The notes under the pieces: generated by a model
What the model saw: only the letters and a program-made list of their open reading frames with translations
The model's database searches: none
Told to the model about the DNA's origin: nothing
Virus record (IMG/VR): IMGVR_UViG_3300040801_004532
Coordinates: 184,137 to 248,136 of that record
DNA: 64,000 nt
Strand: one strand, 5' to 3'
Position numbers and translations under genes: made by a program
Shown here: in pieces, positions 618-45,794 of the stretch
Numbering within the stretch: position 1 is the first letter of the stretch
Layout: every line of letters starts with the position of its first letter

Positions 618-1000
618 TGAAAATAAAAACAGATTTTGTCACAAATAGTTCATCAACATGCTATATATTTTCATGTAAAAAATATATTCCCAAGGAAGAA
701 TTTGGGTTTAAAAGATTCTTAGCCTTTGATAGCTTTATATGCACAAATAAAAGAGAAGAACTAATTGCATATGCAGATTGTATCCCCGTTAAGAAATGTG
801 ATTGGATAATGTCTGCAATAGGACCATCGAATTTTTATCAACTTTCAGAAAAAGAATTTAGCATGTGTATTGATCTAATAAATGCAGGAAAACACGTAGT
901 TACCGTAAGATTAGATCGTTCACAAGAATATAATATTAACTGTCTTATAGAAAAAATGGAGGAAACAAATTCAGTATTGGTACTCAAGGAGGAACATTGA
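617..1000 (+). CDS. Hypothetical protein of the 'MKIKTDFVTNSSS' N-terminal motif family
   Basis: N-terminus MKIKTDFVTNSSST is the same as that of ORF 39196-39726. Its stop overlaps the radical SAM start. Confidence 0.7.
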   Translation: MKIKTDFVTNSSSTCYIFSCKKYIPKEEFGFKRFLAFDSFICTNKREELIAYADCIPVKKCDWIMSAIGPSNFYQLSEKEFSMCIDLINAGKHVVTVRLDRSQEYNINCLIEKMEETNSVLVLKEEH

Positions 1001-7057: not shown

Positions 7058-7736
7058 AAACCTAAATATTGTTATAATAGGGCTGGGAGGTATTGGTTCT
7101 GTTTTATCAGAAAGATTAAGTCGATTTCTAAATTATAATAGAGAATTGAAAACAAATATACTATTAGTTGATGGTGATTCATACGAGCCAAAAAATCAAG
7201 ATAGACAAGATTTCCTACAATTCGGAAACAAAGCCGAAATTAAGGCTGATGAATTAGCGATGAAATTTGGCGAGATTGAATTTGATGCCGTTGGTGAATA
7301 TATAAACGACGGCAATATTTCAGAAACAATACGGGATGGAGACATTATCTTCATTTGTGTTGACAATCACAAATCCAGAATGATAATTAACAATTACTGT
7401 AAAACTTTAACCAATGTTATTTTAATTTCTGGTGGGAATGAGCTTACAGATGGAAATGCACAACTTTATGTCAGAGAAGGAGGTGTGGATAAAACTCCCG
7501 ACTTGTGTACATACCATCCAGAGATAGCAAATCCCGACGATAAATTACCCGAAGAAATGTCTTGTGAAGAATTATCCCAGTCAGAGCCACAGTTGTATTT
7601 TACAAATCTAGGAGTGGCTACTCTTATGTGTTGGATGTTTTATAATGCGTTTGTCAATAAAGTATATGATAGATCCGAAGCTTATTTCGATATTCTTACA
7701 ATGTCTGCAGACTCCAAAATCCGAGTTACAAAGTGA
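7050..7736 (+). CDS. ThiF/E1-like adenylating enzyme (PRTRC ThiF-like)
   Basis: IIGLGGIG Rossmann loop, VDGDSYEPKNQDRQ, CVDNHKSR, SGGNE, candidate catalytic Cys in MSCEE, QLYFTN. Confidence 0.9.
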   Translation: MPENLNIVIIGLGGIGSVLSERLSRFLNYNRELKTNILLVDGDSYEPKNQDRQDFLQFGNKAEIKADELAMKFGEIEFDAVGEYINDGNISETIRDGDIIFICVDNHKSRMIINNYCKTLTNVILISGGNELTDGNAQLYVREGGVDKTPDLCTYHPEIANPDDKLPEEMSCEELSQSEPQLYFTNLGVATLMCWMFYNAFVNKVYDRSEAYFDILTMSADSKIRVTK

Positions 7737-7788
7737 ATTGTGAATCTCGGATCAACCAAACTTTTTCTTTCGAAGGGAGAAATGAACA

Positions 7789-8262
7789 ATGGGTGCAACT
7801 TTTACTCGTGATCAACTGGAAGTCAAGACCGCAGTCGAACTGAAACGTATGTGCGTGGACGAGCTGGGAATCCCCGGGATGACCAAAAAGCCGAAGGCCG
7901 TGGTCATCAACGCAATCATGGAAAAATTCGGGACCAGAACCGTGGCCTCCGGCGGCACCATCTCCAAAGATGGTGGCAAAATGACCGGAATGGAATGGCA
8001 GGCCCGAAGTGTCATGACCAAACCGGGTGCTCCTACCGGTGCCAAAACAACCACAACCATCCATGTTTCCTGCGGTGCCTCCGCCGGGAATTTCCCCGTA
8101 GCGGGCCGCAAGGTTTCCGAAGTCGGGGAATTCCTCCGGGAAGTTCTGAACGTGGATCGCCTATCGACCGGCCTGGTCAACGGCCATGAAGTCGACGCCG
8201 GCTATGTCCTGAAACCCGGCGACAATCTCGAGTTCCTCAAACCGGCAGGTAAAAAGGGATAA
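7789..8262 (+). CDS. Ubiquitin-like (beta-grasp) modifier with N-terminal Rho-N/HEH-like helical domain
   Basis: N-terminal LEVKTAVELKRMCVDELGIPGMTKKPKAVVINAI is Rho_N-like. C-terminal IHVSCG..VAGRKVSEV..LNV..LVNG..VLKPGDNLEFLKPAGKKG is beta-grasp-like with a terminal Gly. Confidence 0.8.
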   Translation: MGATFTRDQLEVKTAVELKRMCVDELGIPGMTKKPKAVVINAIMEKFGTRTVASGGTISKDGGKMTGMEWQARSVMTKPGAPTGAKTTTTIHVSCGASAGNFPVAGRKVSEVGEFLREVLNVDRLSTGLVNGHEVDAGYVLKPGDNLEFLKPAGKKG

Positions 8263-8289
8263 ACTGCCATATTAAGCAGTATGTTAGAA

Positions 8290-8309
8290 GGGGGGCCTCC
8301 GGGCCCCCC
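8290..8309 (+). terminator. GC-rich hairpin with UNCG tetraloop after the Ubl gene (attenuator or mRNA stabiliser)
   Basis: GGGGGGCC-TCCG-GGCCCCCC 8-bp stem with only a weak U tract. A second small stem ACTGC..GCAGT lies at 8263-8280. Confidence 0.55.
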
Positions 8310-8337
8310 AATCTTAAAAAAGAGAGGAAATGTATTA

Positions 8338-9234
8338 GTGCTTCGTAAAGTGACAGTAATTGGACTTGGAACTCTTGGTGGGTTCCTTTGCAAGCACATA
8401 TCAGAACTAGAGAATATAAAAGAAATGGTTATCGTTGATAATGATATTGTGGAAAGCAAAAATGTTTTCTCATCTATTTACAAATATTCTCACATTGGCG
8501 AATATAAGGTCGACGCTCTAAAGGAAATAATTGAGGACGATGTTGCTGTCACAATCAGGAAACAAGATTATAGAGAAGGAAGTACAATTTTACCACTCAG
8601 CGATCTAGTAATTGATTGTCGTGATGTGGTTTGTGATAGAAAAGGCGAAATTGATGTAAGATTATTTATATCAGAAAGAATTCTTATTTTCGATTGTAGA
8701 AAATTTGTCAGAAATACTTGTAGTTATGATGGTAGTTATTCTTTAAAATTGAACAAAAGCGAAATAAACAAAGCAGCCTTTTTCGCTGCTCAAATAATAA
8801 ATAGCGAAGAACTCCCCGATATGATAAAAAATAATATGGTTCAAAGAATTGATTTAAATCTATTGCCATCTGTAATGAGCAGAGCAATAAGAAGAACCCT
8901 TGAAAATAAGATAGATATAATTTATGATCTAACAGAGAATGCAAGAAGGTTACATTGCATTGATGAAAATATCCGACCAATCTTAACATTAAATAAACAA
9001 AAAGATACAAAAGTTTTTGTTGGTACAAGGGATGATACCAGAAAATTTCCAGAGGTAATAACGAGCAAGTATCAAATAATACCACAAAATTCATTAAAAG
9101 ATTCTTTCGATGTAATTCAAAAGTTAACTGAAGTTGTTCAAAGACAACCAGGCGTAAGAAATTTCATAGTTACAGTAAGGAGCGAAAATGGGGAAGATTT
9201 TGTCGAGTTACTGGAAGAAACAGGAGCCGCGTGA
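8338..9234 (+). CDS. Second ThiF/E1-like Rossmann protein, truncated fold plus unknown C-terminal domain
   Basis: VIGLGTLGG, VDNDIVESKN, YKVDAL, DLVIDCRD. Likely start is GTG 8338 after SD GAGAGG, because the track start at 8281 runs through the hairpin. Confidence 0.7.
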   Translation: MLRKVTVIGLGTLGGFLCKHISELENIKEMVIVDNDIVESKNVFSSIYKYSHIGEYKVDALKEIIEDDVAVTIRKQDYREGSTILPLSDLVIDCRDVVCDRKGEIDVRLFISERILIFDCRKFVRNTCSYDGSYSLKLNKSEINKAAFFAAQIINSEELPDMIKNNMVQRIDLNLLPSVMSRAIRRTLENKIDIIYDLTENARRLHCIDENIRPILTLNKQKDTKVFVGTRDDTRKFPEVITSKYQIIPQNSLKDSFDVIQKLTEVVQRQPGVRNFIVTVRSENGEDFVELLEETGAA

Positions 9235-9661
9235 ATTTATCGAAGATCGAATAACAATATGGGGGTATAACCCACACCTACCAGTAGTTGAAGAAGCCCA
9301 TGTATACGAAGGCATAATTGTTCCTGATAGGATGATAAAAGACAAAAATGTTTATCAGATTGTACAATTAGACGAGCTTTATTATATAAACGGTTTCGTA
9401 GTAATAACAGAAAATGAGTTAGTTAAAAATGTAATTTTATTTGGTTATCATCCAAATCGAGATCCAGAAACACATCTATATTGTTTACCCGACAGAAAAA
9501 AGAATATTAAATTTACACAAGAATATTTTAGTTTGTTGATGACTAACATCAAGACATATTATCTTGATGATTGCTTTTATATGCCCGGCAAACATCAGGT
9601 CAAATATAAAAAATTAAAGTCGTTGTATGTTCAAATGAACGAAGGAGAAAAACATGGATGA
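9188..9661 (+). CDS. Putative E2/UBC-like conjugating protein
   Basis: FGYHPNRDPETHLYCLP matches the E2 active-site pattern HPN-x(7-8)-hydrophobic-C-L. Lies at the end of the E1/JAB/Ubl operon. Start uncertain. Confidence 0.55.
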   Translation: MGKILSSYWKKQEPREFIEDRITIWGYNPHLPVVEEAHVYEGIIVPDRMIKDKNVYQIVQLDELYYINGFVVITENELVKNVILFGYHPNRDPETHLYCLPDRKKNIKFTQEYFSLLMTNIKTYYLDDCFYMPGKHQVKYKKLKSLYVQMNEGEKHG

Positions 9662-9878
9662 AGAAAAGAATAATATAATGGAAGACTATATAAGGTCCTT
9701 GATTAAAGATGAGTTAAAAAACATAGATGTAATATTAAAAAAGGAAGAAGCCAATGAAATAGTAAAGGCAATTATGCCACAATTAGATAGCTTAATAGCA
9801 GATCGTATAAAGCTGCATTTTTCAGAGCTGGCGAAAATGGTCCAGCAAAAATTTGGTGGAAGTGACAAAGGAGAGTAG
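9654..9878 (+). CDS. Small helical hypothetical protein immediately upstream of beta'
   Basis: SD GAAGGAG, overlaps upstream stop, ends 3 nt before rpoC. Confidence 0.6.
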   Translation: MDEEKNNIMEDYIRSLIKDELKNIDVILKKEEANEIVKAIMPQLDSLIADRIKLHFSELAKMVQQKFGGSDKGE

Positions 9879-9881
9879 ATA

Positions 9882-12548
9882 ATGCCAAAGTTATTGGATT
9901 ATTCTGCATTTTGTGAAAACCTAGAGGAAGTTTCCTCTCTAAAAGTGTTTGGAAAGAAAAAGTTTCATCCACATGGTCTGTTCTCCGAGCAAATTTTCGG
10001 CCCGATAAAAAATTATACTTGCCAATGTGGCATCTATTATGGAATTTCTAAATCGGGCGGTAAATGCGACCTTTGTGGGGTCGATATTGTTAATAGTGAT
10101 GAACGAAGAAAAAGATTTGCAAAAATCAAAATACCAATACCAGTTGTCAATCCAATCTTTTATGATTTGCTTGCAGAGATTGGAGGAAAAACATTAAAGC
10201 ATGCAATTGATGAATTGATGCGTAATGACAAAAGCTTCCTTTATATGGATGGCGGTGAGCATATTATCAGCACAGATGAACCCCCAGATGGAGTACGAAT
10301 ATACGAAAGAACAGATGCAATAATGAAGCTAGTGAGTGATCTAGCAAATCTGTTTGCAAACGATGGGGTAGAAGAATGGAAATTAATTACAAACAATATA
10401 GATAGCCTTTTGATAAACCAAATAATCGTTTTACCTCCGGATCTCAGACCAACATCTGCTTCTGGTGGCGGTAAACATTTGATGGATAAAATCAATAGGT
10501 ATTATGTTCAGATATTAACAAAGAAAGAAATTATGAAAGATACAATGCTTGATATTATACGAGACAAGAAATTATATTATACCTACTTCAAGCAATTGCA
10601 GAAAGATGTAAATGAATTATACCATCGTATATTAGAAAAGATGGCTAAAAAAGAAGGGTTGATCAGAGGAAACATTTTGGGGAAACGAATTGATTTCTCC
10701 GGTAGAGCAGTCATTACTCCTGATCCAACCCTCAACCTTGATGAGTGTGTTTTACCATATACAATGGTTCTGGAGATATTTAAACTTCCGATTGCAAAAC
10801 GAATCATTCAGCTTGGTAAATTTAAACTATTGAATAAAGCTATTGATTTTGTTGATAGATGTATTGAAACAAATTCTCCAGTATTATGCAAAATCTGTGA
10901 AGAGATAACCAAAGATGAGGTATGTATTCTAAACCGTCAACCATCTCTTCATAAACTTGGAATGCTTGGATTTAATATTAAACTAACATTGGATAAGGTT
11001 ATAAAAATACATCCGCTTGTTTGTCCTCCATTCAATGCAGATTTCGATGGAGATCAAATGGCAGTTTATATCCCAATTACAGAAGAAGCAAAACAAGAAG
11101 TTCGTGAAAAAATGTTTGTTACAAAAAATCTAAGTAGTCCGGCAAATGAGGGGTTGACAACAACACCGAGTCAAGATGTAATCCTTGGTATTTATTTTAT
11201 CACATCAGAAGATTATCCAGATCGAGAAGAAGGTTTTAAAATTTTCAATGACTGTCTGCCTTCTGATTATCCAGAAATAAAAGAAATCATAAATAAAAAT
11301 AAATTGATGGTTATTTTAAATGATATTAAAGATAGATATCCAGAAAACACAACAATGAAAGTACTAGATTCAATTAAAAGAGTTGGTTTCAAATATGCAA
11401 CTCTTTTAGGTTCAACAATGTCACTTGATGATTTTGATATTGCTGGCGTCGAAAAAGTGAAGAGTGATATATTTGGAAAAGATGATGTAAGAGAGCAATT
11501 AACCGCTTTTTCTAATCCAGAAGTAACCAGTTTTCTAAAAGATAATTTTCCATATGCTTACATGATCGAATCTGGAGCAAGAGGAAGCTGGGATCAAGCC
11601 AAACAGCTAATATTGGCAAGAGGGTTCATCTCAAATTTTGAAGGCGAAATTCTTCCTGTACCGATTAAACATAGTTTGGTTGAAGGGTTAACTCAAGAGG
11701 AATTCTTTTATTCAACATATGGATGTAGAAAAGGTCTTCTTGATGTTGCGTTGAATACAGGTACAAGCGGATACTTATCTAGAAAATTAATTTTTACATG
11801 TGCGAACCTTCAACTAGATGAAGGACTTGATGATTGCGGAACAACTGACCTATTAGAAGTCGATGTTAAAAACGAAAGAAAAGCAAGAATGTTAGTTAAT
11901 CGCTATTATCTAAATGGCGGAAAACTAGTAAAAATTACACCAGATAACTATAAAGATATAGTTGGAAAAACAATTGAAATAAGAAGTCCGATTTTATGTA
12001 ACTCGCCAAAACTTTGCAAGATTTGTTACGGCGATCTTCATAAAAAATTAAACAGTAGGTTTGTTGGAATCATTGCAGCTCAAACATTGGGCGAGCGAGG
12101 AACTCAGCTTGTATTAAGAACCTTTCATACATCTGGTTCAGCGATTATCAAAGGGGTCGATGATTATAAAGATCAATCAATGAGACAAAGTGATATTATT
12201 GGAGATCTTGCATCGGTCGCAAGGATGCTACATAAATTTACAGGCAAGACATACGTTCAAATAGTAGACGAATTATTTGAGGTTTACAATAAAGATATTT
12301 ACCATGTCCATTTTGAATGTGTAGTTGCACAGCTAATGTGGCACAATAATAAAAAGTGGAGATTATTGAAAAATAGAGATACGGTAAAACCAACGTATTA
12401 TAGTATTCAATCAGTGCCAAATCAAGAGAGTTGGATATTGGCAATGGCATTTTCAAACCCCAAGCGTAGCATTTTACGGGGTATTGTATATGAAGGTAAA
12501 TATTCAGGGATAATGGACAAAATTCTCAAAGGAGAAAAAATTGAATGA
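9882..12548 (+). CDS. rpoC: DNA-directed RNA polymerase beta' subunit (phage-encoded, compact, unsplit)
   Basis: HGLFSEQIFGP, Zn site CQCG..CDLCG, LGKRIDFSGRAVI, LNRQPSLH, catalytic FNADFDGD, SGARG, SGYLSRKL, TQLVLRTFH. Confidence 0.97.
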   Translation: MPKLLDYSAFCENLEEVSSLKVFGKKKFHPHGLFSEQIFGPIKNYTCQCGIYYGISKSGGKCDLCGVDIVNSDERRKRFAKIKIPIPVVNPIFYDLLAEIGGKTLKHAIDELMRNDKSFLYMDGGEHIISTDEPPDGVRIYERTDAIMKLVSDLANLFANDGVEEWKLITNNIDSLLINQIIVLPPDLRPTSASGGGKHLMDKINRYYVQILTKKEIMKDTMLDIIRDKKLYYTYFKQLQKDVNELYHRILEKMAKKEGLIRGNILGKRIDFSGRAVITPDPTLNLDECVLPYTMVLEIFKLPIAKRIIQLGKFKLLNKAIDFVDRCIETNSPVLCKICEEITKDEVCILNRQPSLHKLGMLGFNIKLTLDKVIKIHPLVCPPFNADFDGDQMAVYIPITEEAKQEVREKMFVTKNLSSPANEGLTTTPSQDVILGIYFITSEDYPDREEGFKIFNDCLPSDYPEIKEIINKNKLMVILNDIKDRYPENTTMKVLDSIKRVGFKYATLLGSTMSLDDFDIAGVEKVKSDIFGKDDVREQLTAFSNPEVTSFLKDNFPYAYMIESGARGSWDQAKQLILARGFISNFEGEILPVPIKHSLVEGLTQEEFFYSTYGCRKGLLDVALNTGTSGYLSRKLIFTCANLQLDEGLDDCGTTDLLEVDVKNERKARMLVNRYYLNGGKLVKITPDNYKDIVGKTIEIRSPILCNSPKLCKICYGDLHKKLNSRFVGIIAAQTLGERGTQLVLRTFHTSGSAIIKGVDDYKDQSMRQSDIIGDLASVARMLHKFTGKTYVQIVDELFEVYNKDIYHVHFECVVAQLMWHNNKKWRLLKNRDTVKPTYYSIQSVPNQESWILAMAFSNPKRSILRGIVYEGKYSGIMDKILKGEKIE

Positions 12549-15544
12549 AAATAGTCAATCCTACCTACAAAATTCAGGATGAAGACAATAGCATCTTCAC
12601 TCTGAGAAAACGGGACTACGAAAATATTTTACCCTTAGCGAGACAAATTCTTGAACCAGTAAGAGAAATTGGTTTCGAAATTACAGAACTTGAACTAAGA
12701 GATTCAAGATTTTCTTCCGGTGAACTTTCAAGAACGATAAAGCAAACTCTTGTTATTCGCCTTCAAAAAGGAACCTCAAATATTGATCTTTCAATATTCG
12801 TTCCAAAATTAGTTGACGACAATTATATATTTATCAATGGAAGGAAAAAGATTCCGTTATTTCAATTATTTGATATTCCTGTTGTAACAAGGGGCGAGTC
12901 GATAAAATTAAGAACTAATGTAGCAACATTGATGGTGGTTGTAGAAAAAGAGGAACCAAAAATTAATATAAGTTTTCTCGGAAAGAAAGTGCCTCTATCA
13001 TTATTGATGTTAGCATATTATGGCCCAGAAGTACTAAACAAACGATTTAATTTATCACAGTTCAATATAAAAGATACAAGTAATTTAATGGAGTTGTTAA
13101 TCGAAGATATAAAACTATTTTGGATTGAGTCAAAGGGTTATACCCAAGATGATTTTATAGTTGAATTAGGACGCGATTATTCAAGATATAATGCAAAATC
13201 AAAGGGCGAAGATGTTGTATATGCCCTAGATTTGATTCCAAAAATTGATCCAATCACAGCTCAATTTTTACAAACCGGATCAATTATCGAAGAGTTATTA
13301 TTGGCATTACAAACAGGCGATATAGATGATACGTTATTTACAAATAAGAGAATTAGATGTTTTGAATATATGATCTTTTCTAAACTATCTAAAATTGTTT
13401 TCGATCTTTGTTTTTCAAACAGGACAAGCAGACAACCAAAATTCAACATTAACTCAAATCAAATTATTTCAGAATGTAATGTTTCAGATATTGTTCAGTT
13501 TGATTTTTCAATCAACCCAATTGAAGAATTAACTAAAATGTCAAGAGTTAGTCTTTTGGGTCCAGGCGGATTTAAAAGAGAAAACATTCCAAGGCATTTA
13601 CGAGATATTTGCCCGTCGATGTTTGGACGGATTTGTCCGGTTGATACACCAGATCGTGATAATTGTGGTGTATTGCAAAATTTTGTTTCAAATGTGAAAC
13701 TTGAGGAAAACATGAGGTTCTCAGAGGAAATCTCTGAACAACCAATATCAATTCCTGTTTCGATGGTTCCGTTCTTGAAGAATGATGATCCAACCAGATT
13801 ACAAATGGCATCATCACAAATGAGACAGGCGATTCTTTTAAAAGATTTTGATGAACCCATGATAAAATCTGGATGTGAGGGACTATATACAGACAAAACC
13901 CAATTTGTCAAAAAGGCGAAGAAAAATGGGGAAGTGATCCACGTTGACAACAAGTATTTAATTGTAATCTATGATGATGGTGAAGCAGAAATCTTTGACA
14001 TAATGTATCGAAAAATTTATGTTGAGCACATGGATTTTATGAATATCTATGTCAAAGCGGGTGACAAGTTCAAGGCTGGGGATATACTTGCTGAAAGTAA
14101 TTTTTGTAAAGATGGAAATATATGCTTTGGAAAAAATCTCTTGACAGGAGTTATGGTTTACTACGGTAATAATTATGAAGATGGAATTGTTGTTTCAGAT
14201 AGACTTGTTAATGAAGATGTTTTAACATCAGTACATTTTAAAGATCTATCATTTACACTACCACCAAATAAGGTCTTGTTATCATTACAAGAAGGAAGAT
14301 ACAAGCCGTTGCCGAAAGCTCTGGAACAATTAAGCGCAGGGTCTCCTTATGCAAAGATAAAAACTCTTTCTACCGATGATATGTATTCTGTATTTTCAGA
14401 AGAAATTTCATTGGAAGCTGAAAAATCATTTATTATTCCTGAGGTAAATATCTATGCAAATACATGGAATGATGAAATTCCTGAGTTCAATGACTGGATT
14501 GAAAAGACAGTCAGTGAACAACAAGAGCGAGATGCAGGATTAAGAAAAATTATAAAGGACAAACTTCCATCCGAAATATCTAAGAAATTCATTAAGGAAA
14601 GCGGATTGGAACTGTCTTCATTTGTTGGAAAGTATAAAATGAAGCGAGAAAAAATAAACGGCATCCATATTGAAATGTATGGTATTCACTTTAGAAAAAT
14701 AAAAGTGGGTGATAAAATAGCGAACAGGCATGGAAATAAAGGAGTTATTTCCAGAATTGTTCCTCATGAAAAGATGCCAAAATTAGAAGATGGAAGACAT
14801 CTTGATATCTGCATCAATCCATTGGGTATTATCTCAAGAATGAACATCGGACAGTTGTTCGAATTGCAATTATCAATGTCTTTATATGATTTACAACAGA
14901 CATTGCTAAAAATGATTAACGAAGAAAAACCCCAAGACGAGATTAAAAAATATCTTATGGGGTATATAAATACTGTGGATAAAACAAAAACCGGATGGTA
15001 TTCAGAGCAATTTGAGAATCAATTACCAAAAGAAATCACAAACGAATTTGTTGCAACCTTAGTTTTAATTCAACCACCTTTTGAGTCATGTAAATTAGAT
15101 GATATTAAAAAGGCTCTTGAATATACCGGTACCGAATTTAAACAAAAGGTTTATGATCCGTTATCAAAAACCTATTTTAAAAATCCCATTGCTGCAGGTT
15201 ACATTTATTTCCTAAGGATGGTTCATATTGCAGAAGAAAAATTAGCAGCGAGAGGCATTGGAGCATATGCAAAAAGAACCCTTCAACCATTAGGGGGAAG
15301 GAAAAATAAAGGTGGCCAAAGATGCGGCGAAATGGAAACAGCTTGTATTATTGGTCATGATGCACCAATAAATCTATTTGAATTTCTTACTACAAAATCT
15401 GACTGTATAGATTTGAAAAATTTGTACATCAGGAAGTTTATTGATCCAAATTTAGTTGACGAAAGTAAAGAGGTTGATTCCATTCCGGAATCTGTAAAAT
15501 TGTTAAATGCGTACTTAACAGTTATTGGAGTAAAACAAAAATGA
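12545..15544 (+). CDS. rpoB: DNA-directed RNA polymerase beta subunit (phage-encoded, unsplit)
   Basis: GRICPVDTPDRDNCG, MASSQMRQA, NYEDG, GDKIANRHGNKGVIS, INPLGIISRMNIGQ, GGQRCGEME. ATGA overlap with rpoC. Confidence 0.97.
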   Translation: MKIVNPTYKIQDEDNSIFTLRKRDYENILPLARQILEPVREIGFEITELELRDSRFSSGELSRTIKQTLVIRLQKGTSNIDLSIFVPKLVDDNYIFINGRKKIPLFQLFDIPVVTRGESIKLRTNVATLMVVVEKEEPKINISFLGKKVPLSLLMLAYYGPEVLNKRFNLSQFNIKDTSNLMELLIEDIKLFWIESKGYTQDDFIVELGRDYSRYNAKSKGEDVVYALDLIPKIDPITAQFLQTGSIIEELLLALQTGDIDDTLFTNKRIRCFEYMIFSKLSKIVFDLCFSNRTSRQPKFNINSNQIISECNVSDIVQFDFSINPIEELTKMSRVSLLGPGGFKRENIPRHLRDICPSMFGRICPVDTPDRDNCGVLQNFVSNVKLEENMRFSEEISEQPISIPVSMVPFLKNDDPTRLQMASSQMRQAILLKDFDEPMIKSGCEGLYTDKTQFVKKAKKNGEVIHVDNKYLIVIYDDGEAEIFDIMYRKIYVEHMDFMNIYVKAGDKFKAGDILAESNFCKDGNICFGKNLLTGVMVYYGNNYEDGIVVSDRLVNEDVLTSVHFKDLSFTLPPNKVLLSLQEGRYKPLPKALEQLSAGSPYAKIKTLSTDDMYSVFSEEISLEAEKSFIIPEVNIYANTWNDEIPEFNDWIEKTVSEQQERDAGLRKIIKDKLPSEISKKFIKESGLELSSFVGKYKMKREKINGIHIEMYGIHFRKIKVGDKIANRHGNKGVISRIVPHEKMPKLEDGRHLDICINPLGIISRMNIGQLFELQLSMSLYDLQQTLLKMINEEKPQDEIKKYLMGYINTVDKTKTGWYSEQFENQLPKEITNEFVATLVLIQPPFESCKLDDIKKALEYTGTEFKQKVYDPLSKTYFKNPIAAGYIYFLRMVHIAEEKLAARGIGAYAKRTLQPLGGRKNKGGQRCGEMETACIIGHDAPINLFEFLTTKSDCIDLKNLYIRKFIDPNLVDESKEVDSIPESVKLLNAYLTVIGVKQK

Positions 15545-15717
15545 CCTCATCGACAGCCTTTTCAAATTACAATATGTATTTTACTATCAACAAACTTTAC
15601 AAGTCATCTTCTACTGAGCCAAATAAGGCTGAGAAGCAATGTACCGAGACAGATACGCCCAAAGAAAAAATAAAGGAAACATCTTTTATGTTCGATACCT
15701 CGGAGTTAGACATATGA
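15541..15717 (+). CDS. 58-aa hypothetical protein missing from the ORF track
   Basis: Translated by hand as MTSSTAFSNYNMYF..SELDI. ATGA overlaps at both ends (rpoB stop and next start) suggest translational coupling. Confidence 0.6.
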   Translation: MTSSTAFSNYNMYFTINKLYKSSSTEPNKAEKQCTETDTPKEKIKETSFMFDTSELDI

Positions 15718-16031
15718 AACCAACATGTCCGATTTGTGGTGGAGAAATTTTACTTGAACATATATTAAATTTATCTCATGTATATAAAATAGATAAAGAT
15801 AAATTTATAAGAGAGGACAACAATGATTTAATTAATAGTGGGGGATGGGTTCGTTTAATCTGCGAAAATGACAGAGAGCATCAATTAGAACCCACCCCCA
15901 CATCAGATATACCATATAATGATTTTATAGAATGGAAAGACGCTATCACTGATAAATTTTATGATTCTTGTGATAAAAAAAATATTGAAGGAGAACTAAT
16001 TCATGGAATGTTTGCCAGATATTCAGTGTGA
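15714..16031 (+). CDS. Zinc-ribbon protein
   Basis: Likely start ATG 15714 after GGAG. MKPTCPICG ... LICENDREH. Confidence 0.55.
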   Translation: MKPTCPICGGEILLEHILNLSHVYKIDKDKFIREDNNDLINSGGWVRLICENDREHQLEPTPTSDIPYNDFIEWKDAITDKFYDSCDKKNIEGELIHGMFARYSV

Positions 16032-16866
16032 CTCTCCCAATGTCCCTATTCCAATTCAGCAGGTTGGAGTTGAAAATGTTGAGGTCCCTTTTAGAATCGA
16101 ATCGAAATATGGGGGATATTATCAACTCAACGCAAATGTATCAATGAGGACAAATCTAAATGAAAAGACAAAGGGAATTTCAATGTCCCGCCTGCTCTTA
16201 ACATTGAAACCATATTTGGATTTGCCTCTGAAGCATACTCTTATAAAACAAATTTTAATTGATTTGAAAGACAATGTTGGCAGCGAAGCAAGTTATATGA
16301 AATTTGAATTTCGAATGCCAATTAAAAGAAAATCTATTAAATCAGATAATGAATTTCCAATCTATTACAAATGTAGGTTTGAAGGACAACTTATTCAAAA
16401 TGATAACGGTTCAAATGACAGTTTATTCAGATTTTACCAAGGAGTTGTAATTCAATATGCTTCGTATTGTCCTTGCTCAGCAGAATTATGCAATGATCTA
16501 ACAACAAAAGGAAGTATTGGTTTTCCTCATAACCAAAGATCATTTGCTGATATTCTTGTTGAAGTACAGGAAGATTATTATGTTTGGTTAGAAGATATTA
16601 TTGAAAGCGTTGAGTCAAAAATCAAAACTCTTCCATATCCTGTTATCAAAAGGGTTGATGAGCAAGAGATTGCAAGAGTTGCAGCCGAAAATCCAATGTT
16701 CGTTGAAGATGCGATAAGATTGATTTCACAATCATTAAACCAAAATGAAAAAATCCATGATTGGATTGTAAAATGTAGTCATCAAGAATCAATTCATACA
16801 TCTGAGGCAATTGCAATTAACTGGAAAGGTATTAACGAAGGGTTTAACGGAAGGCGATATTTATGA
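16003..16866 (+). CDS. folE2: GTP cyclohydrolase I type B (FolE2/MptA family)
   Basis: PIQQVGV, KGISMSRL, YCPCS, HNQRS, FVEDAIR and ESIH..A are the family motifs. Confidence 0.93.
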   Translation: MECLPDIQCDSPNVPIPIQQVGVENVEVPFRIESKYGGYYQLNANVSMRTNLNEKTKGISMSRLLLTLKPYLDLPLKHTLIKQILIDLKDNVGSEASYMKFEFRMPIKRKSIKSDNEFPIYYKCRFEGQLIQNDNGSNDSLFRFYQGVVIQYASYCPCSAELCNDLTTKGSIGFPHNQRSFADILVEVQEDYYVWLEDIIESVESKIKTLPYPVIKRVDEQEIARVAAENPMFVEDAIRLISQSLNQNEKIHDWIVKCSHQESIHTSEAIAINWKGINEGFNGRRYL

Positions 16867-21424: not shown

Positions 21425-21461
21425 GAGAGGGGGGTTTGGAACCCCCCCTCTCATTTTTTTT
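21425..21461 (+). terminator. Rho-independent terminator ending the left operon
   Basis: GAGAGGGGGGTT-TGG-AACCCCCCCTCTC followed by A and T8. Confidence 0.85.
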
Positions 21462-21493
21462 GGAACAAAAAATAAAAGGAGTGGATAAATAGA

Positions 21494-22747: not shown

Positions 22748-22788
22748 ACAAAGATATTTTTTAAGAACAAACAATAAAGGAATCCTTT

Positions 22789-37721: not shown

Positions 37722-37743
37722 AACTATATATATAAATTAGTGA
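37722..37743 (+). promoter_or_regulatory. Motif B (AACTATATATATwAATTAGTGA), candidate early/middle promoter
   Basis: 21/22 identity with 45734-45755. Both copies end 40-41 nt before the first ATG of a + strand islet. Confidence 0.6.
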
Positions 37744-37783
37744 TATAGATGTTTTAACTGTTTTTTTTAAGGAGGTGTACACG

Positions 37784-41689: not shown

Positions 41690-43684
41690 TTATTCGATGA
41701 AGAAGTTTAACAAGATCTGTTCTGTTGTTCTTGTTGGTTGTAGGATTATATCAACATGGAATTTCTTTGTTTTACGTTCATAATCTGTAGCTCCTACATC
41801 AACAGAGTAACTATCAAGACCACGTCTGTTTTTAATATCTTCAAGGAAATCAACAATAGCTGCTGAAACCTGTCCCCATGTAATTTGGTCATTTTGCTCA
41901 AAAATAAAGTTTCGGCAGAATTGCTCAATTGCTCTCTTTGCATAAAGAACAAGTCTTACAATATTTAGATCTTGAAGAGCACTTGCTCTAGCTTGTGAGG
42001 TCAATTGTCCCCAAACAACATACCCATTTGAAAACTTAACAATTGGGTTTAGTTGTTTTAGATATAGCTGATCTCTTTGAGATAGTCTTGGATTAAATCT
42101 CAACTCTTTAATTGAATCAATTGCAGCTCTTTGGAAACCAGCCGCTGCAAACCACAGTTCAGAAACTGTATCATTTCTTGGAATAATATATGACATATGG
42201 TAAATAGGTGAAAACCAAATATCATCTCCTGTAAATGGATCAGATACTTTATTAAATGGTTCATATAATGCAACAAAATAGTTATTGAATACATTAGTAT
42301 CTTGACGAGTTGAAATTGCATTATTGACAGTTGAGTTGTCACCATTGTCCATGATACCAACACAATCTCGTCTGGTTTGACATAGTGTGCTGATAGCTGT
42401 TTTTACATCTGCTGGATAACCAGCATCATAAACTAGGGTGAAGTAAATATTTTCAGTATCAAGTATTTGGTCATCAATAAGTCCAGAATAAGCTTGTTCC
42501 AATAGGGTTGGAGCTGAATATGGGTACCAAGTTCCACCTGGATCTGTTGCTGGAGTTTCAATATTTAAAGAACCATTTGGTTTTCTTAGACTTCCTTCTG
42601 ATCCTTTCTTTAAAGGTTTTGGATCTCCAGAAATAAATGGAGTGGCAACACTTGCATATGACTCTTTAATTAGGTAAGTAATATCTGAGTTTACATCAAA
42701 TGATGTAGTATTTCCATTCCATCCTGTTGTTGCTCCAGTTAGATTTCTATCTGAGAAGACATTGATTTCATCACCAACACTTCCCCCTGAAGCTCCCAAC
42801 CAACCCCAAATCTCATTTCCTCTTCCATCCTTTGCAATTACTACATAATTTGCGTTTCCTGTTTCTGGATTTGTTTCCCAGTCAGAGAAATCCTGCTTAT
42901 TATCTGTAATCTTAGCAGAACCAGCTGTTAAAGTAACAGAAACAGTACCAATGTTATTATCGTAATTCTTTGCGATTAAATAATATCCATCAGTATAATC
43001 TTCATTTGATAGAACCATTTCAGCCCGTAATACAGTTGAATAATTTTCAAGAATGTTTGCGATGAAAATTGAATCGCCCGCTGAATCAACTGCTTCTGGA
43101 TCAAATGAAACTTCAAAAGACTCAATGATAACATCTTCGCCATCTGATTGTTTTTCATAAACATCTAGAACATAGACGCCATTTAATGTTGGGTTTGAAT
43201 GCTCCGTAAATCTTACACCAAGAGCGTTATAGTAATCACCTCTACCAATTGGTCTGATGATACAAAGAGGTTTTACATCCCCTGATGTTTCAAGTTGTGT
43301 TTTAATATCGTTTTCATCATTTAGTGTTGCGTCGTAATCAACCCAAACAACTGTTGTAGCATCTGCTGGGGCAAGTCTTGTGTTGATTCTGATAAACGAA
43401 TATGCAGCATCATCTGGAAGCAATCTCATCCAGTATAAACCACCAGACTCACCTAGATGATTATAAACGACATATGGAGCTTGACCATAATTCTTTGTAT
43501 AATCTTTAATATCCGGTTCGCCCCACTCTGCAATAAAGTCAGATCTTGAACCTACAAAGATTAATTCGTTATCTCTTCCTTTTCTTGTAAAACCACTTAT
43601 AAATCCAATGGTTGAAGGAACCACTTGGATATATTGTGATAAATCTATGATTTTGGTAAAAACACCTGGCGAAACATTTGCCAT
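41690..43684 (-). CDS. Contractile tail sheath protein
   Basis: SPGVFTKIID, GDYYNALGV, YDAG, ELWFAAAG..RA, RDQLYLKQLNPI, LNIVRL, FIFEQND. Confidence 0.95.
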   Translation of the reverse strand: MANVSPGVFTKIIDLSQYIQVVPSTIGFISGFTRKGRDNELIFVGSRSDFIAEWGEPDIKDYTKNYGQAPYVVYNHLGESGGLYWMRLLPDDAAYSFIRINTRLAPADATTVVWVDYDATLNDENDIKTQLETSGDVKPLCIIRPIGRGDYYNALGVRFTEHSNPTLNGVYVLDVYEKQSDGEDVIIESFEVSFDPEAVDSAGDSIFIANILENYSTVLRAEMVLSNEDYTDGYYLIAKNYDNNIGTVSVTLTAGSAKITDNKQDFSDWETNPETGNANYVVIAKDGRGNEIWGWLGASGGSVGDEINVFSDRNLTGATTGWNGNTTSFDVNSDITYLIKESYASVATPFISGDPKPLKKGSEGSLRKPNGSLNIETPATDPGGTWYPYSAPTLLEQAYSGLIDDQILDTENIYFTLVYDAGYPADVKTAISTLCQTRRDCVGIMDNGDNSTVNNAISTRQDTNVFNNYFVALYEPFNKVSDPFTGDDIWFSPIYHMSYIIPRNDTVSELWFAAAGFQRAAIDSIKELRFNPRLSQRDQLYLKQLNPIVKFSNGYVVWGQLTSQARASALQDLNIVRLVLYAKRAIEQFCRNFIFEQNDQITWGQVSAAIVDFLEDIKNRRGLDSYSVDVGATDYERKTKKFHVDIILQPTRTTEQILLNFFIE

Positions 43685-43873
43685 TAGCGTATCCTCCTGT
43701 TTATTATCTTTTCTCTAAAATATAAGTGAGTTGCCTTTTCAATAACAACAACGATCTCCTTGAAACTTTTTCTTCTTAAATAATTTCTCTATATTTTAAG
43801 ATACGCTTTCCAAAATGATCTACCTATTGCTAGGTAAATCAATTTCTTCCTTGATTTTCCTTTTACATTAAGT

Positions 43874-44593
43874 TTACAAATACAAATACCATACAAAAAT
43901 TAATCTTCTCTGAGCTGTTTTAATTAATGATGGAAATGTAACACGTGCAAAAATGCTAAATTGACCACTATATGCCGGCGCAGTACTTTCAGCAGAAAAT
44001 AGTCCTGCCTCACTCAATTGTTCTCCATTTGCGTCATTAACCCCAACTGTTATTTGAATTTTTACAACCAAAAGTTTATCATCATTCAATGCATCGGCTT
44101 CAAATGAAGGATTGCCTCCCGGGACTGAGTCAAAGGTCTTTTTATAATAACCTGTTTTTGGATAAACTCCACCAGAAGGAGTTGGATCACCCATAATCTG
44201 CCAATCACCATAACCAGCAGCAGTAGAATCAGTAATCATAACCGGCGAAGCTAAGCCAGTATCTGTAATAATTGGAGGAACAGGATCAAGAGGATCAGCG
44301 GGTCTAACTCCCCCCTCTCCAATTCCAAACCAAGAAACATATTCATCTTTTGTTGGGGTTGCAGATGAATTAACATTTACTAATCTTTGAGCTAACATTT
44401 CTCTACCAAGATATAAAACTAAATTGCTTTTATGGACCAACTTTTTATTTCCAGTCTCATCCGCTTCAAAGATTTGAACTTCACCTTGTGGTCTTCGTTC
44501 AGAGGCCTTGGGCGAATTACCCATACCATCACTCAAACAATTATCGCCATAGATCTCTTTGATAACAACCTCTGTGTCTTTAGTTTTGCTCAT
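43874..44593 (-). CDS. Probable tail/baseplate-associated protein (DUF3751/tail-fibre-proximal-like)
   Basis: WFGIGEG, LSEAGLF..IFARVTFP..K. Confidence 0.5.
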   Translation of the reverse strand: MSKTKDTEVVIKEIYGDNCLSDGMGNSPKASERRPQGEVQIFEADETGNKKLVHKSNLVLYLGREMLAQRLVNVNSSATPTKDEYVSWFGIGEGGVRPADPLDPVPPIITDTGLASPVMITDSTAAGYGDWQIMGDPTPSGGVYPKTGYYKKTFDSVPGGNPSFEADALNDDKLLVVKIQITVGVNDANGEQLSEAGLFSAESTAPAYSGQFSIFARVTFPSLIKTAQRRLIFVWYLYL

Positions 44594-44637
44594 TTTTTAA
44601 GATATCCTTCTCTAATGGAATCGAAATATACTTTATA

Positions 44638-44649
44638 TTTTGTTCTAAA
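44638..44649 (-). promoter_or_regulatory. Motif A copy, candidate late promoter of the sheath operon
   Basis: TTTAGAACAAAA, 45 nt upstream of the ATG at 44593. Confidence 0.55.
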
Positions 44650-44677
44650 TAATACACTCGTTTAGTTCCAACCGACG

Positions 44678-45755: not shown

Positions 45756-45794
45756 ATGGATGGAAACTTATTACTATTATTTATGGAGGATAAA

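What the first reader, a model, noticed from the sequence alone, without database searches (positions are those of the whole stretch)
9882..15544. Compact, unsplit two-subunit phage RNAP in beta'-then-beta order
Seen: an 888-aa beta' with NADFDGD and a 999-aa beta, ATGA-coupled, each a single ORF with no intron or intein evident. Known: bacterial rpoBC has the opposite order and longer proteins, and phiKZ-type jumbo phage RNAPs are split into several genes. A deep-branching RNAP-encoding Caudovirales lineage was reported by Weinheimer and Aylward 2020 (from memory, verify). Inference: the phage may belong to that poorly characterised group. No alpha, omega or sigma gene is recognisable nearby.
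Basis: partly seen in the sequence, partly recalled or inferred. Interest (0 to 1): 0.7.

Follow-up and report, generated by a model that had tools for sequence, protein, structure and literature searches.

The report
Compact jumbo-phage RNA polymerase, one of two
The two genes really do encode a stripped-down bacterial-type RNA polymerase core (beta' then beta) of an uncultured T4-like jumbo phage from an already described lineage, and the same genome carries a second, divergent copy of the pair, so the phage probably runs its own two-polymerase transcription programme.

Summary
Observation confirmed. Window 9882-12548 (+) encodes an 888-aa beta' with NADFDGD. Window 12545-15544 (+) encodes a 999-aa beta. 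They share an ATGA overlap, and neither has an insertion, intron or intein.

The window is the end of a 248-kb IMG/VR phage record. Its capsid, portal and terminase are T4-like.

The pair is not a captured rpoBC. The best bacterial beta' is 28-33% identical. In a concatenated tree, 29 bacteria from at least 13 phyla form one clade that excludes the phage. All 61 bacterial loci have beta-then-beta' order and longer proteins.

All five long relatives searched have it too.

Two promoter-like motifs divide the genome, and both recur in a complete 277-kb relative. Motif A (AGAACAAA) precedes structural genes and the second pair. Motif B (CTATATATATWAAT) heads every + strand block.

By analogy with phiKZ and AR9, I infer that the finding's pair is the early or middle "non-virion" enzyme and the second pair a late, possibly packaged one. 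This is not shown. No alpha, omega or sigma homologue was found.

Verdict: a new member of a known kind.

The parts
9882..12548 (+). beta'1: 888-aa RNAP beta' subunit of set 1. It has an N-terminal zinc finger (aa 46-66), clamp coiled-coil, NADFDGD, bridge helix (GCRKGLLDVALNTGTSGYLSRKL) and the trigger-loop arm (GERGTQLVLRTFHTSG).
   Evidence: By alignment it lacks E. coli beta' 966-1131 (within SI3, 943-1130), about 1150-1232 (jaw), 309-325 (rudder), 523-573 and the C-terminal 1359-1407.
12545..15544 (+). beta1: 999-aa RNAP beta subunit of set 1. It keeps LGPGG, PFLKNDDPTR, SQMRQ and GDKIANRHGNKGV.
   Evidence: By alignment it lacks E. coli beta 225-345 (SI1, 225-343), about 584-653 and parts of SI2.
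12545..12548 (+). ATGA stop/start overlap between beta'1 and beta1.
   Evidence: It is present in only 12 of 79 relatives, so it is not a defining feature.
9654..9878 (+). 74-aa acidic, helical ORF that ends 3 nt before beta'1. Function unknown.
   Evidence: A homologue was found in 34 of 80 related loci.
9188..9661 (+). 157-aa ORF upstream of beta'1. Function unknown.
   Evidence: Found in 64 of 80 loci at a median 29% identity. It is not a paralogue of the 155-aa ORF upstream of beta'2.
15639..16031 (+). 130-aa ORF with a CPICGG zinc-ribbon-like motif, downstream of beta1.
   Evidence: Found in only 20 of 80 loci. No Pfam match.
21426..21477 (+). Hairpin plus T8 terminator (GAGAGGGGGG...CCCCCCCTCTC TTTTTTTT), followed at once by motif A (GGAACAAAAAATAAAA). 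This is the first strong + strand terminator found downstream of set 1 and marks the end of the long + strand unit that contains set 1.
   Evidence: genome 205562-205613.
22759..22779 (+). Motif A (TTTTAAGAACAAACAATAAAG), 9 nt upstream of the TerL gene.
   Evidence: TerL lies at 22789-24441.
44631..44651 (-). Motif A (TATTTAGAACAAAATATAAAG) upstream of the virion protein / tail sheath operon (44593..41690, - strand).
37723..37744 (+). Motif B (ACTATATATATAAATTAGTGAT) at the head of a + strand block. A second copy lies at 45735-45756.

Best explanation
SHOWN. The two ORFs encode the catalytic core (beta' and beta) of a bacterial-type multisubunit RNA polymerase belonging to an uncultured T4-like jumbo phage of the mReC lineage.

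The proteins are minimal versions of the bacterial subunits. Every active-site element is kept. The lineage-specific inserts (beta SI1, beta' SI3), the jaw, a 17-residue segment at E. coli beta' 309-325 (the rudder, from memory) and the C-terminal tail are deleted. Nothing is inserted.

The genome encodes a second, divergent and also unsplit beta'-then-beta pair (set 2). It lies at G000:C1:155783-158782 (999 aa) and 158795-162880 (1361 aa). No alpha, omega or sigma homologue was found.

INFERRED. The phage runs a two-polymerase programme like that of phiKZ and AR9. Set 1, the finding, sits promoter-less inside a long + strand block of DNA-metabolism genes that is headed by the AT-rich motif B. 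It is therefore made early or in the middle of infection. It acts as the 'non-virion' enzyme that reads motif A (tTTTAGAACAAAAtAtAAA). Motif A precedes the capsid, tail, terminase and DNA polymerase genes and also the set-2 operon.

Set 2 is insulated by a terminator and driven by motif A, so it is made later. It may be packaged and injected to start the next infection at motif B promoters.

Unidentified phage proteins must supply assembly and promoter recognition in place of alpha and sigma.
For: IDENTITY.
- Pfam and PDB matches.
- Conserved motifs across 80 relatives.
- A deletions-only alignment against E. coli numbering. The SI1 and SI3 boundaries were checked in PMC6970531.

LINEAGE.
- 303 IMG/VR relatives at 56-78% identity.
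- An mReC-listed relative.
- Gp23, gp20 and TerL hallmark families.
- A conserved syntenic neighbourhood.

NOT BACTERIAL.
-.

SECOND SET.
- Found. It is 31% identical to beta'1 (E 5e-110). It keeps NADFDGD and lacks the zinc finger.
- It is present in all 5 long relatives searched.
- The set-1 and set-2 subtrees agree with each other, which points to an old duplication that has been inherited together.

NO ALPHA, OMEGA OR SIGMA.
-.

PROMOTER CLASSES.
- AGAACAAA falls in the 7.7% non-coding DNA in 23 of 48 copies (P 1e-13). These copies point at the next gene on the same strand; most lie 0-90 nt from its start codon and a few 130-320 nt.
- Motif A precedes the MCP, tail fibre, tail sheath operon, TerL and DNA polymerase genes.
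- Motif B has 12 exact copies against 0 in 30 simulations. All are on the + strand (P 2e-4), and one heads each + strand block.
- Both motifs are enriched in the complete 277-kb relative G001.

SET 2 CONTROL.
- A hairpin plus T8 terminator and then motif A lie directly before the 155-aa ORF/beta'2/beta2 operon. The arrangement is conserved in L196 and L197.

SET 1 CONTROL.
- No motif A or B lies within 30 kb upstream in this genome.
- 58 of 64 related loci have no motif A within 4 kb upstream.
- No strong + strand terminator lies between 164 and 205.5 kb.

PRECEDENT.
- In phiKZ and AR9 the non-virion RNAP genes are early, the virion RNAP is late and packaged, and early promoters are AT-rich motifs of about 10 nt (PMC7598289).
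Against: There is no transcript, proteome or biochemical evidence.
- Only DNA metagenomes hold the locus.
- The motifs are called promoters from position and conservation alone.
- In the G001-like subclade (6 of 64 loci) a motif A lies 1.2-1.8 kb upstream of set 1 as well. The temporal split is therefore not clean across the lineage.
- Motif A also precedes the DNA polymerase gene, so it marks a middle-plus-late class rather than a strictly late one.
- Motif B could be a host sigma-70-type -10 element.
- The beta' C-terminal-half tree gave no specific link between either set and the phiKZ/AR9 virion or non-virion enzymes. Their branches are 3.7-10 substitutions per site.
- The conserved small proteins of the set-2 operon gave confident or fair models but no sigma-like or alpha-like fold match. 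The factors that replace alpha and sigma remain unidentified.
Confidence: 0.6

Rival explanations
1. Neither phage polymerase is packaged. Host RNAP with a host sigma factor starts infection at motif B, which acts as a -10-like TATA-rich element. The two phage enzymes then divide middle and late transcription or serve different templates.
For: The phage is T4-like in its capsid, portal, terminase and DNA polymerase, and T4-like phages classically use host RNAP. Motif B contains TATAAT-like sequence. There is no evidence of packaging.
Against: No -35 element is conserved upstream of motif B (information content at most 0.5 bits). The 14-nt core of motif B (CTATATATATWAAT) recurs in a relative whose RNAPs are only 52-63% identical. 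That fits a phage-encoded reader better than a host sigma. Sigma-70-type promoter matches are not enriched near the locus (99 found against 89 +/- 9.5 expected). The genome has no recognisable sigma.
Confidence: 0.22
2. The roles are reversed. Set 1 is the packaged virion enzyme that reads motif B, and set 2 is the enzyme made during infection.
For: In the G001-like subclade, set 1 also has a motif A upstream. Set 1 is the less diverged, more 'complete' enzyme and keeps the zinc finger.
Against: In this genome and 58 of 64 relatives, set 1 has no motif A nearby. Set 2 always lies downstream of one: immediately, behind a terminator, in this genome's own clade, and 2.3 kb upstream in G001.
Confidence: 0.1
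3. Set 1 is not self-sufficient. Its beta' and beta assemble with host alpha, omega and sigma into a hybrid enzyme.
For: Set 1 keeps bacterial consensus motifs, the clamp coiled-coil and the zinc finger. No phage alpha, omega or sigma was found.
Against: The subunits are only 28-33% identical to any bacterial homologue, and the C-terminal tail and other surface regions are deleted. phiKZ and AR9 enzymes work without alpha (PMC7598289). Two promoter motifs conserved across the lineage argue for phage-specific recognition.
Confidence: 0.07
4. The pair is a recently captured or misassembled bacterial rpoBC fragment.
For: The best PDB and genome matches are bacterial beta' and beta.
Against: Identity is at most 33%. 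The bacteria form a separate clade with support 100. The gene order is opposite in 61 of 61 bacterial loci. The phage neighbourhood is syntenic in 80 loci. GC content is uniform across the region.
Confidence: 0.01

Closest known systems
mReC: multimeric-RNAP-encoding Caudovirales (Weinheimer and Aylward 2020, Nat Commun 11:4506, PMC7481178). Later papers describe multisubunit RNAP in 'Straboviridae'-like large phages (PMC11835377, PMC13282480).
   Same: Full-length beta and beta' of about 900-1000 aa and about 1000-1365 aa with NADFDGD, on T4-like phage contigs carrying MCP PF07068 and TerL PF03237. They cluster apart from cellular RNAPs. A 63%-identical relative is one of that paper's named contigs.
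   Different: Nothing essential differs; this genome is another member. The paper's supplement lists 'a' and 'b' gene pairs from single contigs. Searches of its main text for 'two copies', 'multiple copies' and 'sigma' found nothing, and 'paralog'/'duplicat' hits concerned only the beta/beta' paralogy used for rooting. I found no discussion there of two RNAP sets per genome, gene order or promoters.
phiKZ/AR9-type jumbo phage RNAPs: virion and non-virion multisubunit RNAPs of Chimalliviridae and PBS1-like phages
   Same: Two paralogous beta/beta'-type enzymes per genome. No alpha, omega or sigma homologues. An AT-rich, highly conserved motif sits in front of presumed early operons. Motif A contains an AACA core, reminiscent of the AR9 late consensus AACA-N6-TW (PMC7598289).
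   Different: In phiKZ and AR9 each subunit is split into 2-3 genes scattered over the genome. Here both sets are unsplit, adjacent and in beta'-then-beta order. Sequence similarity is low (AR9 nvRNAP beta E 7e-27 against 9e-86 for bacterial beta). No specific phylogenetic link was found. The virion module is T4-like, not phiKZ-like. Packaging of either enzyme is untested.
Bacterial RNAP core (rpoB-rpoC)
   Same: The same domain set and catalytic motifs. These are the closest solved structures.
   Different: The gene order is opposite. The proteins are 25-35% shorter than any of the 61 bacterial homologues sampled. SI1, SI3, the jaw, the rudder-equivalent and the C-terminal tail are deleted. 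Identity is 28-33%. There are no alpha, omega or sigma genes and no L10-L7/12 context.
Single beta'-like genes of cultured phages, such as Rhizobium phage RHph_Y65 (Kleczkowskaviridae)
   Same: An unsplit beta'-like protein in a phage of about 200 kb, 27% identical over aa 32-757.
   Different: RHph_Y65 has a 1128-aa beta' and no detectable beta. It is not a close relative.

Membership tests
Bacterial-type multisubunit RNAP catalytic core (beta'/beta) | Beta' carries the double-psi beta-barrel with NADFDGD, plus a bridge helix and trigger loop. | tested here: met
   Pfam Rpb1 domains 2, 3 and 5 match above the cut-offs. NADFDGD, the bridge helix and the RTFH trigger-loop arm are in the translation. 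They are conserved in 78, 68 and 78 of 80 relatives.
Bacterial-type multisubunit RNAP catalytic core (beta'/beta) | Beta carries Rpb2 domains 3, 6 and 7 and the conserved LGPGG, NMQRQ and GRHGNKG motifs. | tested here: met
   RHGNKG is present in 79 of 80 relatives.
Bacterial-type multisubunit RNAP catalytic core (beta'/beta) | Catalytic activity: DNA-dependent RNA synthesis. | not testable with these tools
   This needs expression and an in vitro assay.
mReC lineage (Weinheimer and Aylward 2020) | Both beta and beta' are at least 800 aa, carry NADxDGD and lie on one viral contig. | tested here: met
   The criteria are quoted.
mReC lineage (Weinheimer and Aylward 2020) | The RNAP clusters apart from cellular homologues and together with named mReC contigs. 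| tested here: met
   The tree places set 1 in one clade (support 100) that includes L055 (WOR52_10000459), L063 and L064 (Ga0180432 contigs), all listed in the paper's supplement. Archaeal, eukaryotic and NCLDV sequences were not included in my tree.
mReC lineage (Weinheimer and Aylward 2020) | T4-like MCP (PF07068/VOG11186) and TerL (PF03237). | tested here: met
   MCP matches PF07068 at E 3e-33. TerL matches PF03237 at E 1e-4 with 22.1 bits, at the 22-bit cut-off. The portal matches PF07230.
phiKZ/AR9-type two-RNAP system | Two paralogous beta/beta' sets in one genome. | tested here: met
phiKZ/AR9-type two-RNAP system | Beta and beta' are each split into several genes, with a common split after the DPBB domain. 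| tested here: not met
   All four genes are single ORFs. Set 1 is unsplit in 79 of 80 relatives. Occasional splits of beta'2 near aa 780-800 in G003 and G005 fall at a different place.
phiKZ/AR9-type two-RNAP system | One set is packaged in the virion and transcribes early genes. The other set is made early and transcribes later genes. | not testable with these tools
   Only indirect evidence exists, from motif and terminator placement. No RNA runs hold the locus.
phiKZ/AR9-type two-RNAP system | Specific sequence relatedness to phiKZ/AR9 subunits. | tested here: inconclusive
   PHROG matches to the split subunits reach E 1e-23 to 1e-44. In the tree their branches are 3.7-10 substitutions per site and their placement is unsupported.
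Bacterial rpoBC operon (recent capture) | Beta-then-beta' order, full-length proteins and nesting within a bacterial clade. | tested here: not met

The most novel reading that the evidence does not exclude
T4-like (mReC) jumbo phages run a self-contained, alpha-less and sigma-less two-polymerase programme using unsplit, minimal beta'/beta enzymes. This arose in parallel with, or shares a deep origin with, the Chimalliviridae system.

One polymerase (set 2) lacks the zinc finger and deviates in motifs conserved in all the bacterial beta subunits aligned here. It is made from motif A promoters and injected to read the one-strand-only AT-rich motif B. The other polymerase (set 1, the finding) is made early and reads motif A.

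The factors that give promoter specificity would be new proteins. Candidates are the orphan-fold 155-aa, 206-aa and 82-aa products conserved in the set-2 operon.
Probability: 0.35. Interest if true: 0.75.

Novelty: new member of a known kind. Interest (0 to 1): 0.5.

Why it matters
At 888 and 999 aa, with only deletions relative to bacterial subunits, these are among the smallest intact bacterial-type beta' and beta proteins. They amount to a natural minimal-core experiment, showing which parts of RNAP (SI1, SI3, jaw, rudder-like loop, alpha- and omega-binding tail) can be lost.

Because the subunits are unsplit and adjacent, this lineage should be much easier to express and reconstitute than the 4-5-piece phiKZ and AR9 enzymes.

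If the two-polymerase reading is right, independence from host transcription has evolved, or been kept, in T4-like phages as well as in nucleus-forming phages. The two sharply defined motifs would then give ready-made templates for asking how an alpha-less, sigma-less RNAP finds promoters.

The lineage is common, with at least 303 relatives in IMG/VR, and has no cultured member.

Tried and rejected
(1) SIGMA-LIKE FACTOR IN THE SET-2 OPERON. The ESM-Atlas structure search of the 206-aa ORF after beta2 listed ECF sigma, sigma-70 and TFIIB-like clusters at TM 0.32-0.35. I built a 114-sequence alignment and obtained a confident all-alpha AF2 model (pLDDT 92). Foldseek against the PDB gave nothing better than E 1. 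The VIA wide search gave a best Z of 6.8, in the noise range for helical folds. The lead is not supported.

(2) THE 155-aa ORF BEFORE BETA'2. It has 128 homologues and no Pfam match. The model has pLDDT 79.5 and no PDB match.

(3) PARALOGY OF FLANKING ORFs. The small ORFs that flank the two sets are not paralogues of each other.

(4) THE ORF AFTER BETA1. The highly conserved ORF just after beta1 looked like a candidate accessory subunit. It is a FolE2 GTP cyclohydrolase.

(5) LINK TO phiKZ/AR9. A beta' C-terminal-half tree was meant to link set 1 or set 2 to the phiKZ/AR9 virion or non-virion enzymes. The branches are too long to be informative, and the careful search did not finish.

(6) TRANSCRIPT EVIDENCE. 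Only DNA metagenomes hold the locus.

(7) SIGMA-70 PROMOTERS AND GENERIC TERMINATORS. Neither is enriched around the locus.

(8) CULTURED RELATIVES. The GenBank phage collection has none. The best phage hits are 27-34% identical, and the top rows are bacterial contaminants of that collection.

(9) NOT USED. Complex prediction was not used, because the two subunits exceed its size limit and I had no specific partner hypothesis.
Full report
**1. The observation**

The ORF list gives window 9882..12548 (+, 888 aa, ATG) and 12545..15544 (+, 999 aa, ATG). The translations have no internal stops. The first contains PPFNADFDGDQMAVY. The second contains LGPGGF, PFLKNDDPTR, SSQMRQ and GDKIANRHGNKGVIS. 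The junction reads ...ATTGAATGAAAAT..., so the beta start ATG (12545-12547) overlaps the beta' stop TGA (12546-12548).

Pfam finds Rpb1 domains 2, 3 and 5 above the cut-offs in the first protein, with domains 1 and 4 below them. It finds Rpb2 domains 3, 6 and 7 in the second. Against the PDB the best matches are bacterial beta' (E 3e-103) and bacterial beta (E 9e-86). The AR9 non-virion RNAP beta piece reaches only E 7e-27, and archaeal and eukaryotic subunits E 1e-20 to 1e-30. The description is correct in every particular.

**2. Where the window lies**

The window is G000:C1:184137-248136, the last 64 kb of a 248,136-bp linear IMG/VR virus record that CheckV rates 79% complete. A simple gene call gives 326 ORFs covering 92% of the record.

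Virion and replication genes are T4-like:
- major capsid protein, PF07068 Gp23, E 3e-33
- portal, PF07230
- TerL, PF03237, in the window at 22789-24441
- tail sheath, baseplate wedge and tail fibres
- family-B-type DNA polymerase and topoisomerase II large subunit

GC content is even (0.32-0.40) across the window. There is no sign of a chimeric assembly.

**3. Relatives and the named lineage**

A scan of IMG/VR found 303 stretches encoding a relative of beta'1. The best 80 are full-length and 56-78% identical. All 80 of those loci also encode beta1, and the neighbourhood from about 7 kb upstream to about 7 kb downstream is syntenic.

In 79 of the 80 loci both genes are single ORFs in beta'-then-beta order (beta' 805-915 aa, beta 996-1067 aa). 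The ATGA overlap occurs in only 12. Most have a spacer of 157-240 nt, and some up to 1 kb.

One relative is L055 (IMGVR_UViG_3300001782_000005), 277,131 bp with terminal repeats. It is the contig WOR52_10000459 listed as 'mReC' in the supplementary tables of Weinheimer and Aylward 2020. L063 and L064 are that paper's Ga0180432 contigs.

The paper defines the group by:
- beta and beta' of at least 800 aa with NADxDGD on viral contigs
- clustering apart from cellular RNAPs
- MCP PF07068 and TerL PF03237

These criteria appear, and all are met here.

**4. Not a captured bacterial operon**

A scan of one genome per prokaryotic species returned at least 599 beta' matches. The best 80 are 28-33% identical. 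They come from Margulisiibacteriota, Fibrobacterota, Omnitrophota, Actinomycetota, Bacillota, Pseudomonadota and others, with no preferred donor.

I built a maximum-likelihood tree of concatenated beta'+beta with 53 rows and 1968 columns under LG+G4 (quick search). It contained 29 bacteria from at least 13 named phyla (4 rows have no phylum name), 19 set-1 pairs and 5 set-2 pairs. Each group forms one clade with SH-aLRT 100, on stems of 1.2-1.5 substitutions per site.

With three groups and no outgroup, this tree cannot say whether the two phage sets are sisters. It does show that neither nests inside bacteria.

All 61 bacterial loci that carry both genes have beta-then-beta' order. Their beta' ORFs are at least 1142 aa and their beta ORFs at least 1074 aa.

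**5. Anatomy of the compact subunits**

I aligned both proteins to Salmonella RpoC and RpoB, which share E. coli numbering (locus L181).

Beta'1 has no insertion of 12 aa or more. It lacks:
- 966-1131, which falls within SI3 (943-1130; boundary confirmed in PMC6970531)
- about 1150-1232, the jaw (landmark from memory)
- 309-325, which from memory is the rudder loop. The clamp coiled-coil before it is present, and the sequence runs straight into the conserved GNILGKR.
- 523-573
- several 12-22-residue loops
- the last 49 residues

It keeps the N-terminal zinc finger (C46, C48, C62, C65).

Beta1 likewise shows only deletions. It lacks:
- E. coli 225-345, which is SI1 (225-343)
- about 584-653
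- about 40 residues of SI2
- short N-terminal segments

At the rifampicin-pocket positions equivalent to E. coli D516 and H526 (numbering from memory), beta1 has F and K (alignment). This predicts insensitivity to rifampicin.

**6. A second RNAP set**

Searching the phage's own record with beta'1 and beta1 found a second pair 38 kb upstream of the window. Beta'2 lies at G000:C1:155783-158782 (999 aa) and beta2 at 158795-162880 (1361 aa). Both are on the + strand, unsplit and again in beta'-then-beta order. Pfam confirms both.

Beta'2 is 31% identical to beta'1 (E 5e-110). It keeps NADFDGD and lacks exactly the zinc-finger segment. None of the four related beta'2 proteins checked has the zinc finger.

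Beta2 has about 260 extra residues in its N-terminal third. It also departs from motifs conserved in all eight bacterial beta subunits aligned:
- RHGNKG becomes RF/YGNKG
- LGPGG becomes VGKTVGG
- NMQRQ becomes NQVKQ

All five long relatives searched carry both sets. The set-1 and set-2 subtrees agree with each other. The duplication is therefore old and the two sets are inherited together.

The published supplement labels gene pairs 'a' (about 1365 + 1002 aa) and 'b' (about 1015 + 900 aa), both from a single contig. The authors' data therefore contain both sets. Searches of the main text for 'two copies', 'multiple copies' and 'sigma' found nothing, and the 'paralog' and 'duplicat' hits all concerned the ancient beta/beta' paralogy. 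I found no discussion there of two sets per genome.

Later papers only note that multisubunit RNAP is prevalent in 'Straboviridae'-like large phages and may have been acquired convergently with Chimalliviridae (PMC11835377; PMC13282480).

**7. No alpha, omega or sigma, and no identified substitute**

Sigma70_r2, RNA_pol_L and Rpb6 profiles found nothing in six-frame searches of the 248 kb. The control genomes scored: 14 of 14 for RNA_pol_L and Rpb6, and 11 of 14 for Sigma70_r2.

The set-2 genes sit in a conserved five-gene cassette: a 155-aa ORF, beta'2, beta2, a 206-aa ORF and an 82-aa ORF. The cassette is present even in the most distant set-2 locus. It is also in an NCBI contig of 255,557 bp labelled as a Candidatus Thorarchaeota MAG.

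The 206-aa protein gave a confident all-alpha model, and the 155-aa protein a fair one. Neither matches a solved fold. They are candidates for accessory subunits, nothing more.

Around set 1, the well-conserved downstream ORF is a FolE2 GTP cyclohydrolase. The upstream genes are an E2/JAB/ThiF ubiquitin-like module. The small ORFs next to beta'1 and beta1 are poorly conserved.

**8. Two promoter-like motifs**

K-mer enrichment in upstream intergenic DNA gave two motifs.

*Motif A* has the consensus tTTTAGAACAAAAtAtAAA.
- 23 of 48 genomic copies of AGAACAAA lie in the 7.7% of the genome that is non-coding (P 1e-13).
- They occur on both strands and point at the next gene on the same strand. Most lie 0-90 nt from its start codon and a few 130-320 nt.
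- Motif A precedes the major capsid protein, a tail fibre, the virion protein / tail sheath operon, TerL and, in a weaker GGAACAAA form, the DNA polymerase.

*Motif B* has the consensus CTATATATAT[AT]AAT[AT]AnTGA.
- It has 12 exact copies, against none in 30 Markov simulations.
- All copies are on the + strand (13 strong sites counting one variant copy; P 2e-4 for 13 of 13 on one strand).
- One copy stands at the head of every + strand gene block.

Both motifs are again the most enriched upstream words in the complete 277-kb relative G001. There, motif B is almost confined to the strand that carries the RNAP genes. Conservation of the 14-nt motif B core between phages whose RNAPs are only 52-63% identical points to phage-encoded readers.

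**9. How the two sets relate to the motifs**

Directly before the 155-aa ORF/beta'2/beta2 operon lie a hairpin plus T8 terminator and then motif A (G000 155230-155311). The same arrangement is conserved in L196 and L197. In G001 a motif A lies 2.3 kb upstream of set 2, with two called ORFs and about 560 nt of uncalled, apparently coding sequence between.

Set 1 has no motif A or B within 30 kb upstream. No strong + strand terminator lies between 164 kb and the terminator-plus-motif-A module at 205.6 kb, which is window 21426-21477. Of 64 related loci with at least 4 kb of upstream flank, 58 have no motif A near set 1. The six exceptions all belong to the G001-like subclade.

In phiKZ and AR9 the non-virion RNAP genes are early, the virion RNAP is made late and packaged, and early promoters are AT-rich motifs of about 10 nt (PMC7598289). 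By analogy the most economical reading is:
- set 1 is the early or middle enzyme that reads motif A
- set 2 is made from motif A and reads motif B, possibly after packaging

This is inference from sequence layout only. No RNA data hold the locus. A tree with AR9 and phiKZ beta' pieces was uninformative.

**10. Verdict**

The thing itself, a compact unsplit beta'/beta RNAP of the mReC lineage, is already described as a kind, so this is a new member.

This analysis adds:
- the deletion map
- the beta'-then-beta order as a lineage-wide trait of both sets
- the explicit two-set architecture, with a zinc-finger-less second beta'
- two genome-wide promoter-like motifs and their relation to the two sets

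I put the identity at about 0.97 and the division-of-labour model at about 0.45. Interest is moderate at 0.5: a specialist would not be surprised by the RNAP itself but would probably find the testable two-polymerase layout useful.

Noticed in passing
outside the window: G000:C1:155312-163753 (locus L096:7313-15754): A second RNAP cassette: a 155-aa ORF, beta'2 (999 aa, no zinc finger), beta2 (1361 aa, deviant conserved motifs), a 206-aa ORF and an 82-aa ORF. A hairpin plus T8 terminator and motif A precede it. It is conserved in all set-2 loci examined.
   Followed up: yes
window 2778-9234 (+): A phage-encoded ubiquitin-like conjugation module directly upstream of the RNAP. It comprises Prok-E2_D (857 aa), Prok-JAB (568 aa), two ThiF/E1-like proteins and a 157-aa ORF with a faint TGS/beta-grasp hit. 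It is conserved in 63-75 of 80 related loci and resembles bacterial Bil/6E-type systems.
   Followed up: partly
window 16003-16866 (+), window 997-2061 (+), and G000:C1:41311-42708 (-): A FolE2 GTP cyclohydrolase IB (PF02649, E 9e-65), a radical-SAM protein and a weak hit to queuine tRNA-ribosyltransferase (DpdA-like). Together they suggest a 7-deazaguanine DNA modification pathway.
   Followed up: partly
G000:C1:53842-82768 and 164150-164225: An array of 29 tRNA genes, including a suppressor tRNA with anticodon CUA, plus a tmRNA (RF00023, 141 bits, tag ADDYYTEVALAA). The tmRNA points to a bacterial host.
   Followed up: partly
locus L221 (NCBI JBHLRM010000001.1, 255,557 bp, assembly GCA_048882605.1): A closely related jumbo phage contig with the same five-gene set-2 cassette is deposited as contig 1 of a 'Candidatus Thorarchaeota archaeon' MAG. 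Given the bacterial-type tmRNA and RNAP in this lineage, it is probably a binning artefact.
   Followed up: partly
whole genome G000; window copies at 37723-37744 and 45735-45756: All 13 strong copies of motif B (CTATATATATWAAT...) lie on one strand, and several are hundreds of bases from the next ORF. The relative G001 shows the same strand confinement. The reason is unknown; possibilities include the direction of genome entry or early transcription.
   Followed up: partly
G003:C1:42078-45762 and G005:C1:137928-140932 (loci L092, L091); L085:4241-7361: In two relatives beta'2 is split near aa 780-800: 782 + 240 aa with a gap of about 700 bp in one, and 802 + 235 aa in the other. In one relative beta1 is split 728 + 298 aa. 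These may be insertions of mobile elements or assembly errors.
   Followed up: no
locus L178 (Rhizobium phage RHph_Y65, MN988525.1 154425-157808): This cultured Kleczkowskaviridae phage has a single 1128-aa beta'-like gene, and no beta homologue was detectable anywhere in its 207-kb genome.
   Followed up: partly
locus L201 (IMGVR_UViG_3300035698_012504, 275,542 bp), 7992-12518: A 1508-aa beta'-like protein only 35% identical to beta'2, followed by a beta2-like gene at 34% identity. It may represent a further RNAP-encoding jumbo phage lineage.
   Followed up: no
window 56459-58351 (-): A 630-aa highly repetitive protein. It matches PHROG families of unknown function in many stretches (phrog_17273 at E 1e-139; 12 stretches of the 78-residue phrog_35701).
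   Followed up: no
window 12545-15544, beta1 residues about 313-337: At the positions that align with E. coli beta D516 and H526 (classic rifampicin-resistance sites; numbering from memory), beta1 has F and K. This predicts a rifampicin-insensitive enzyme.
   Followed up: partly
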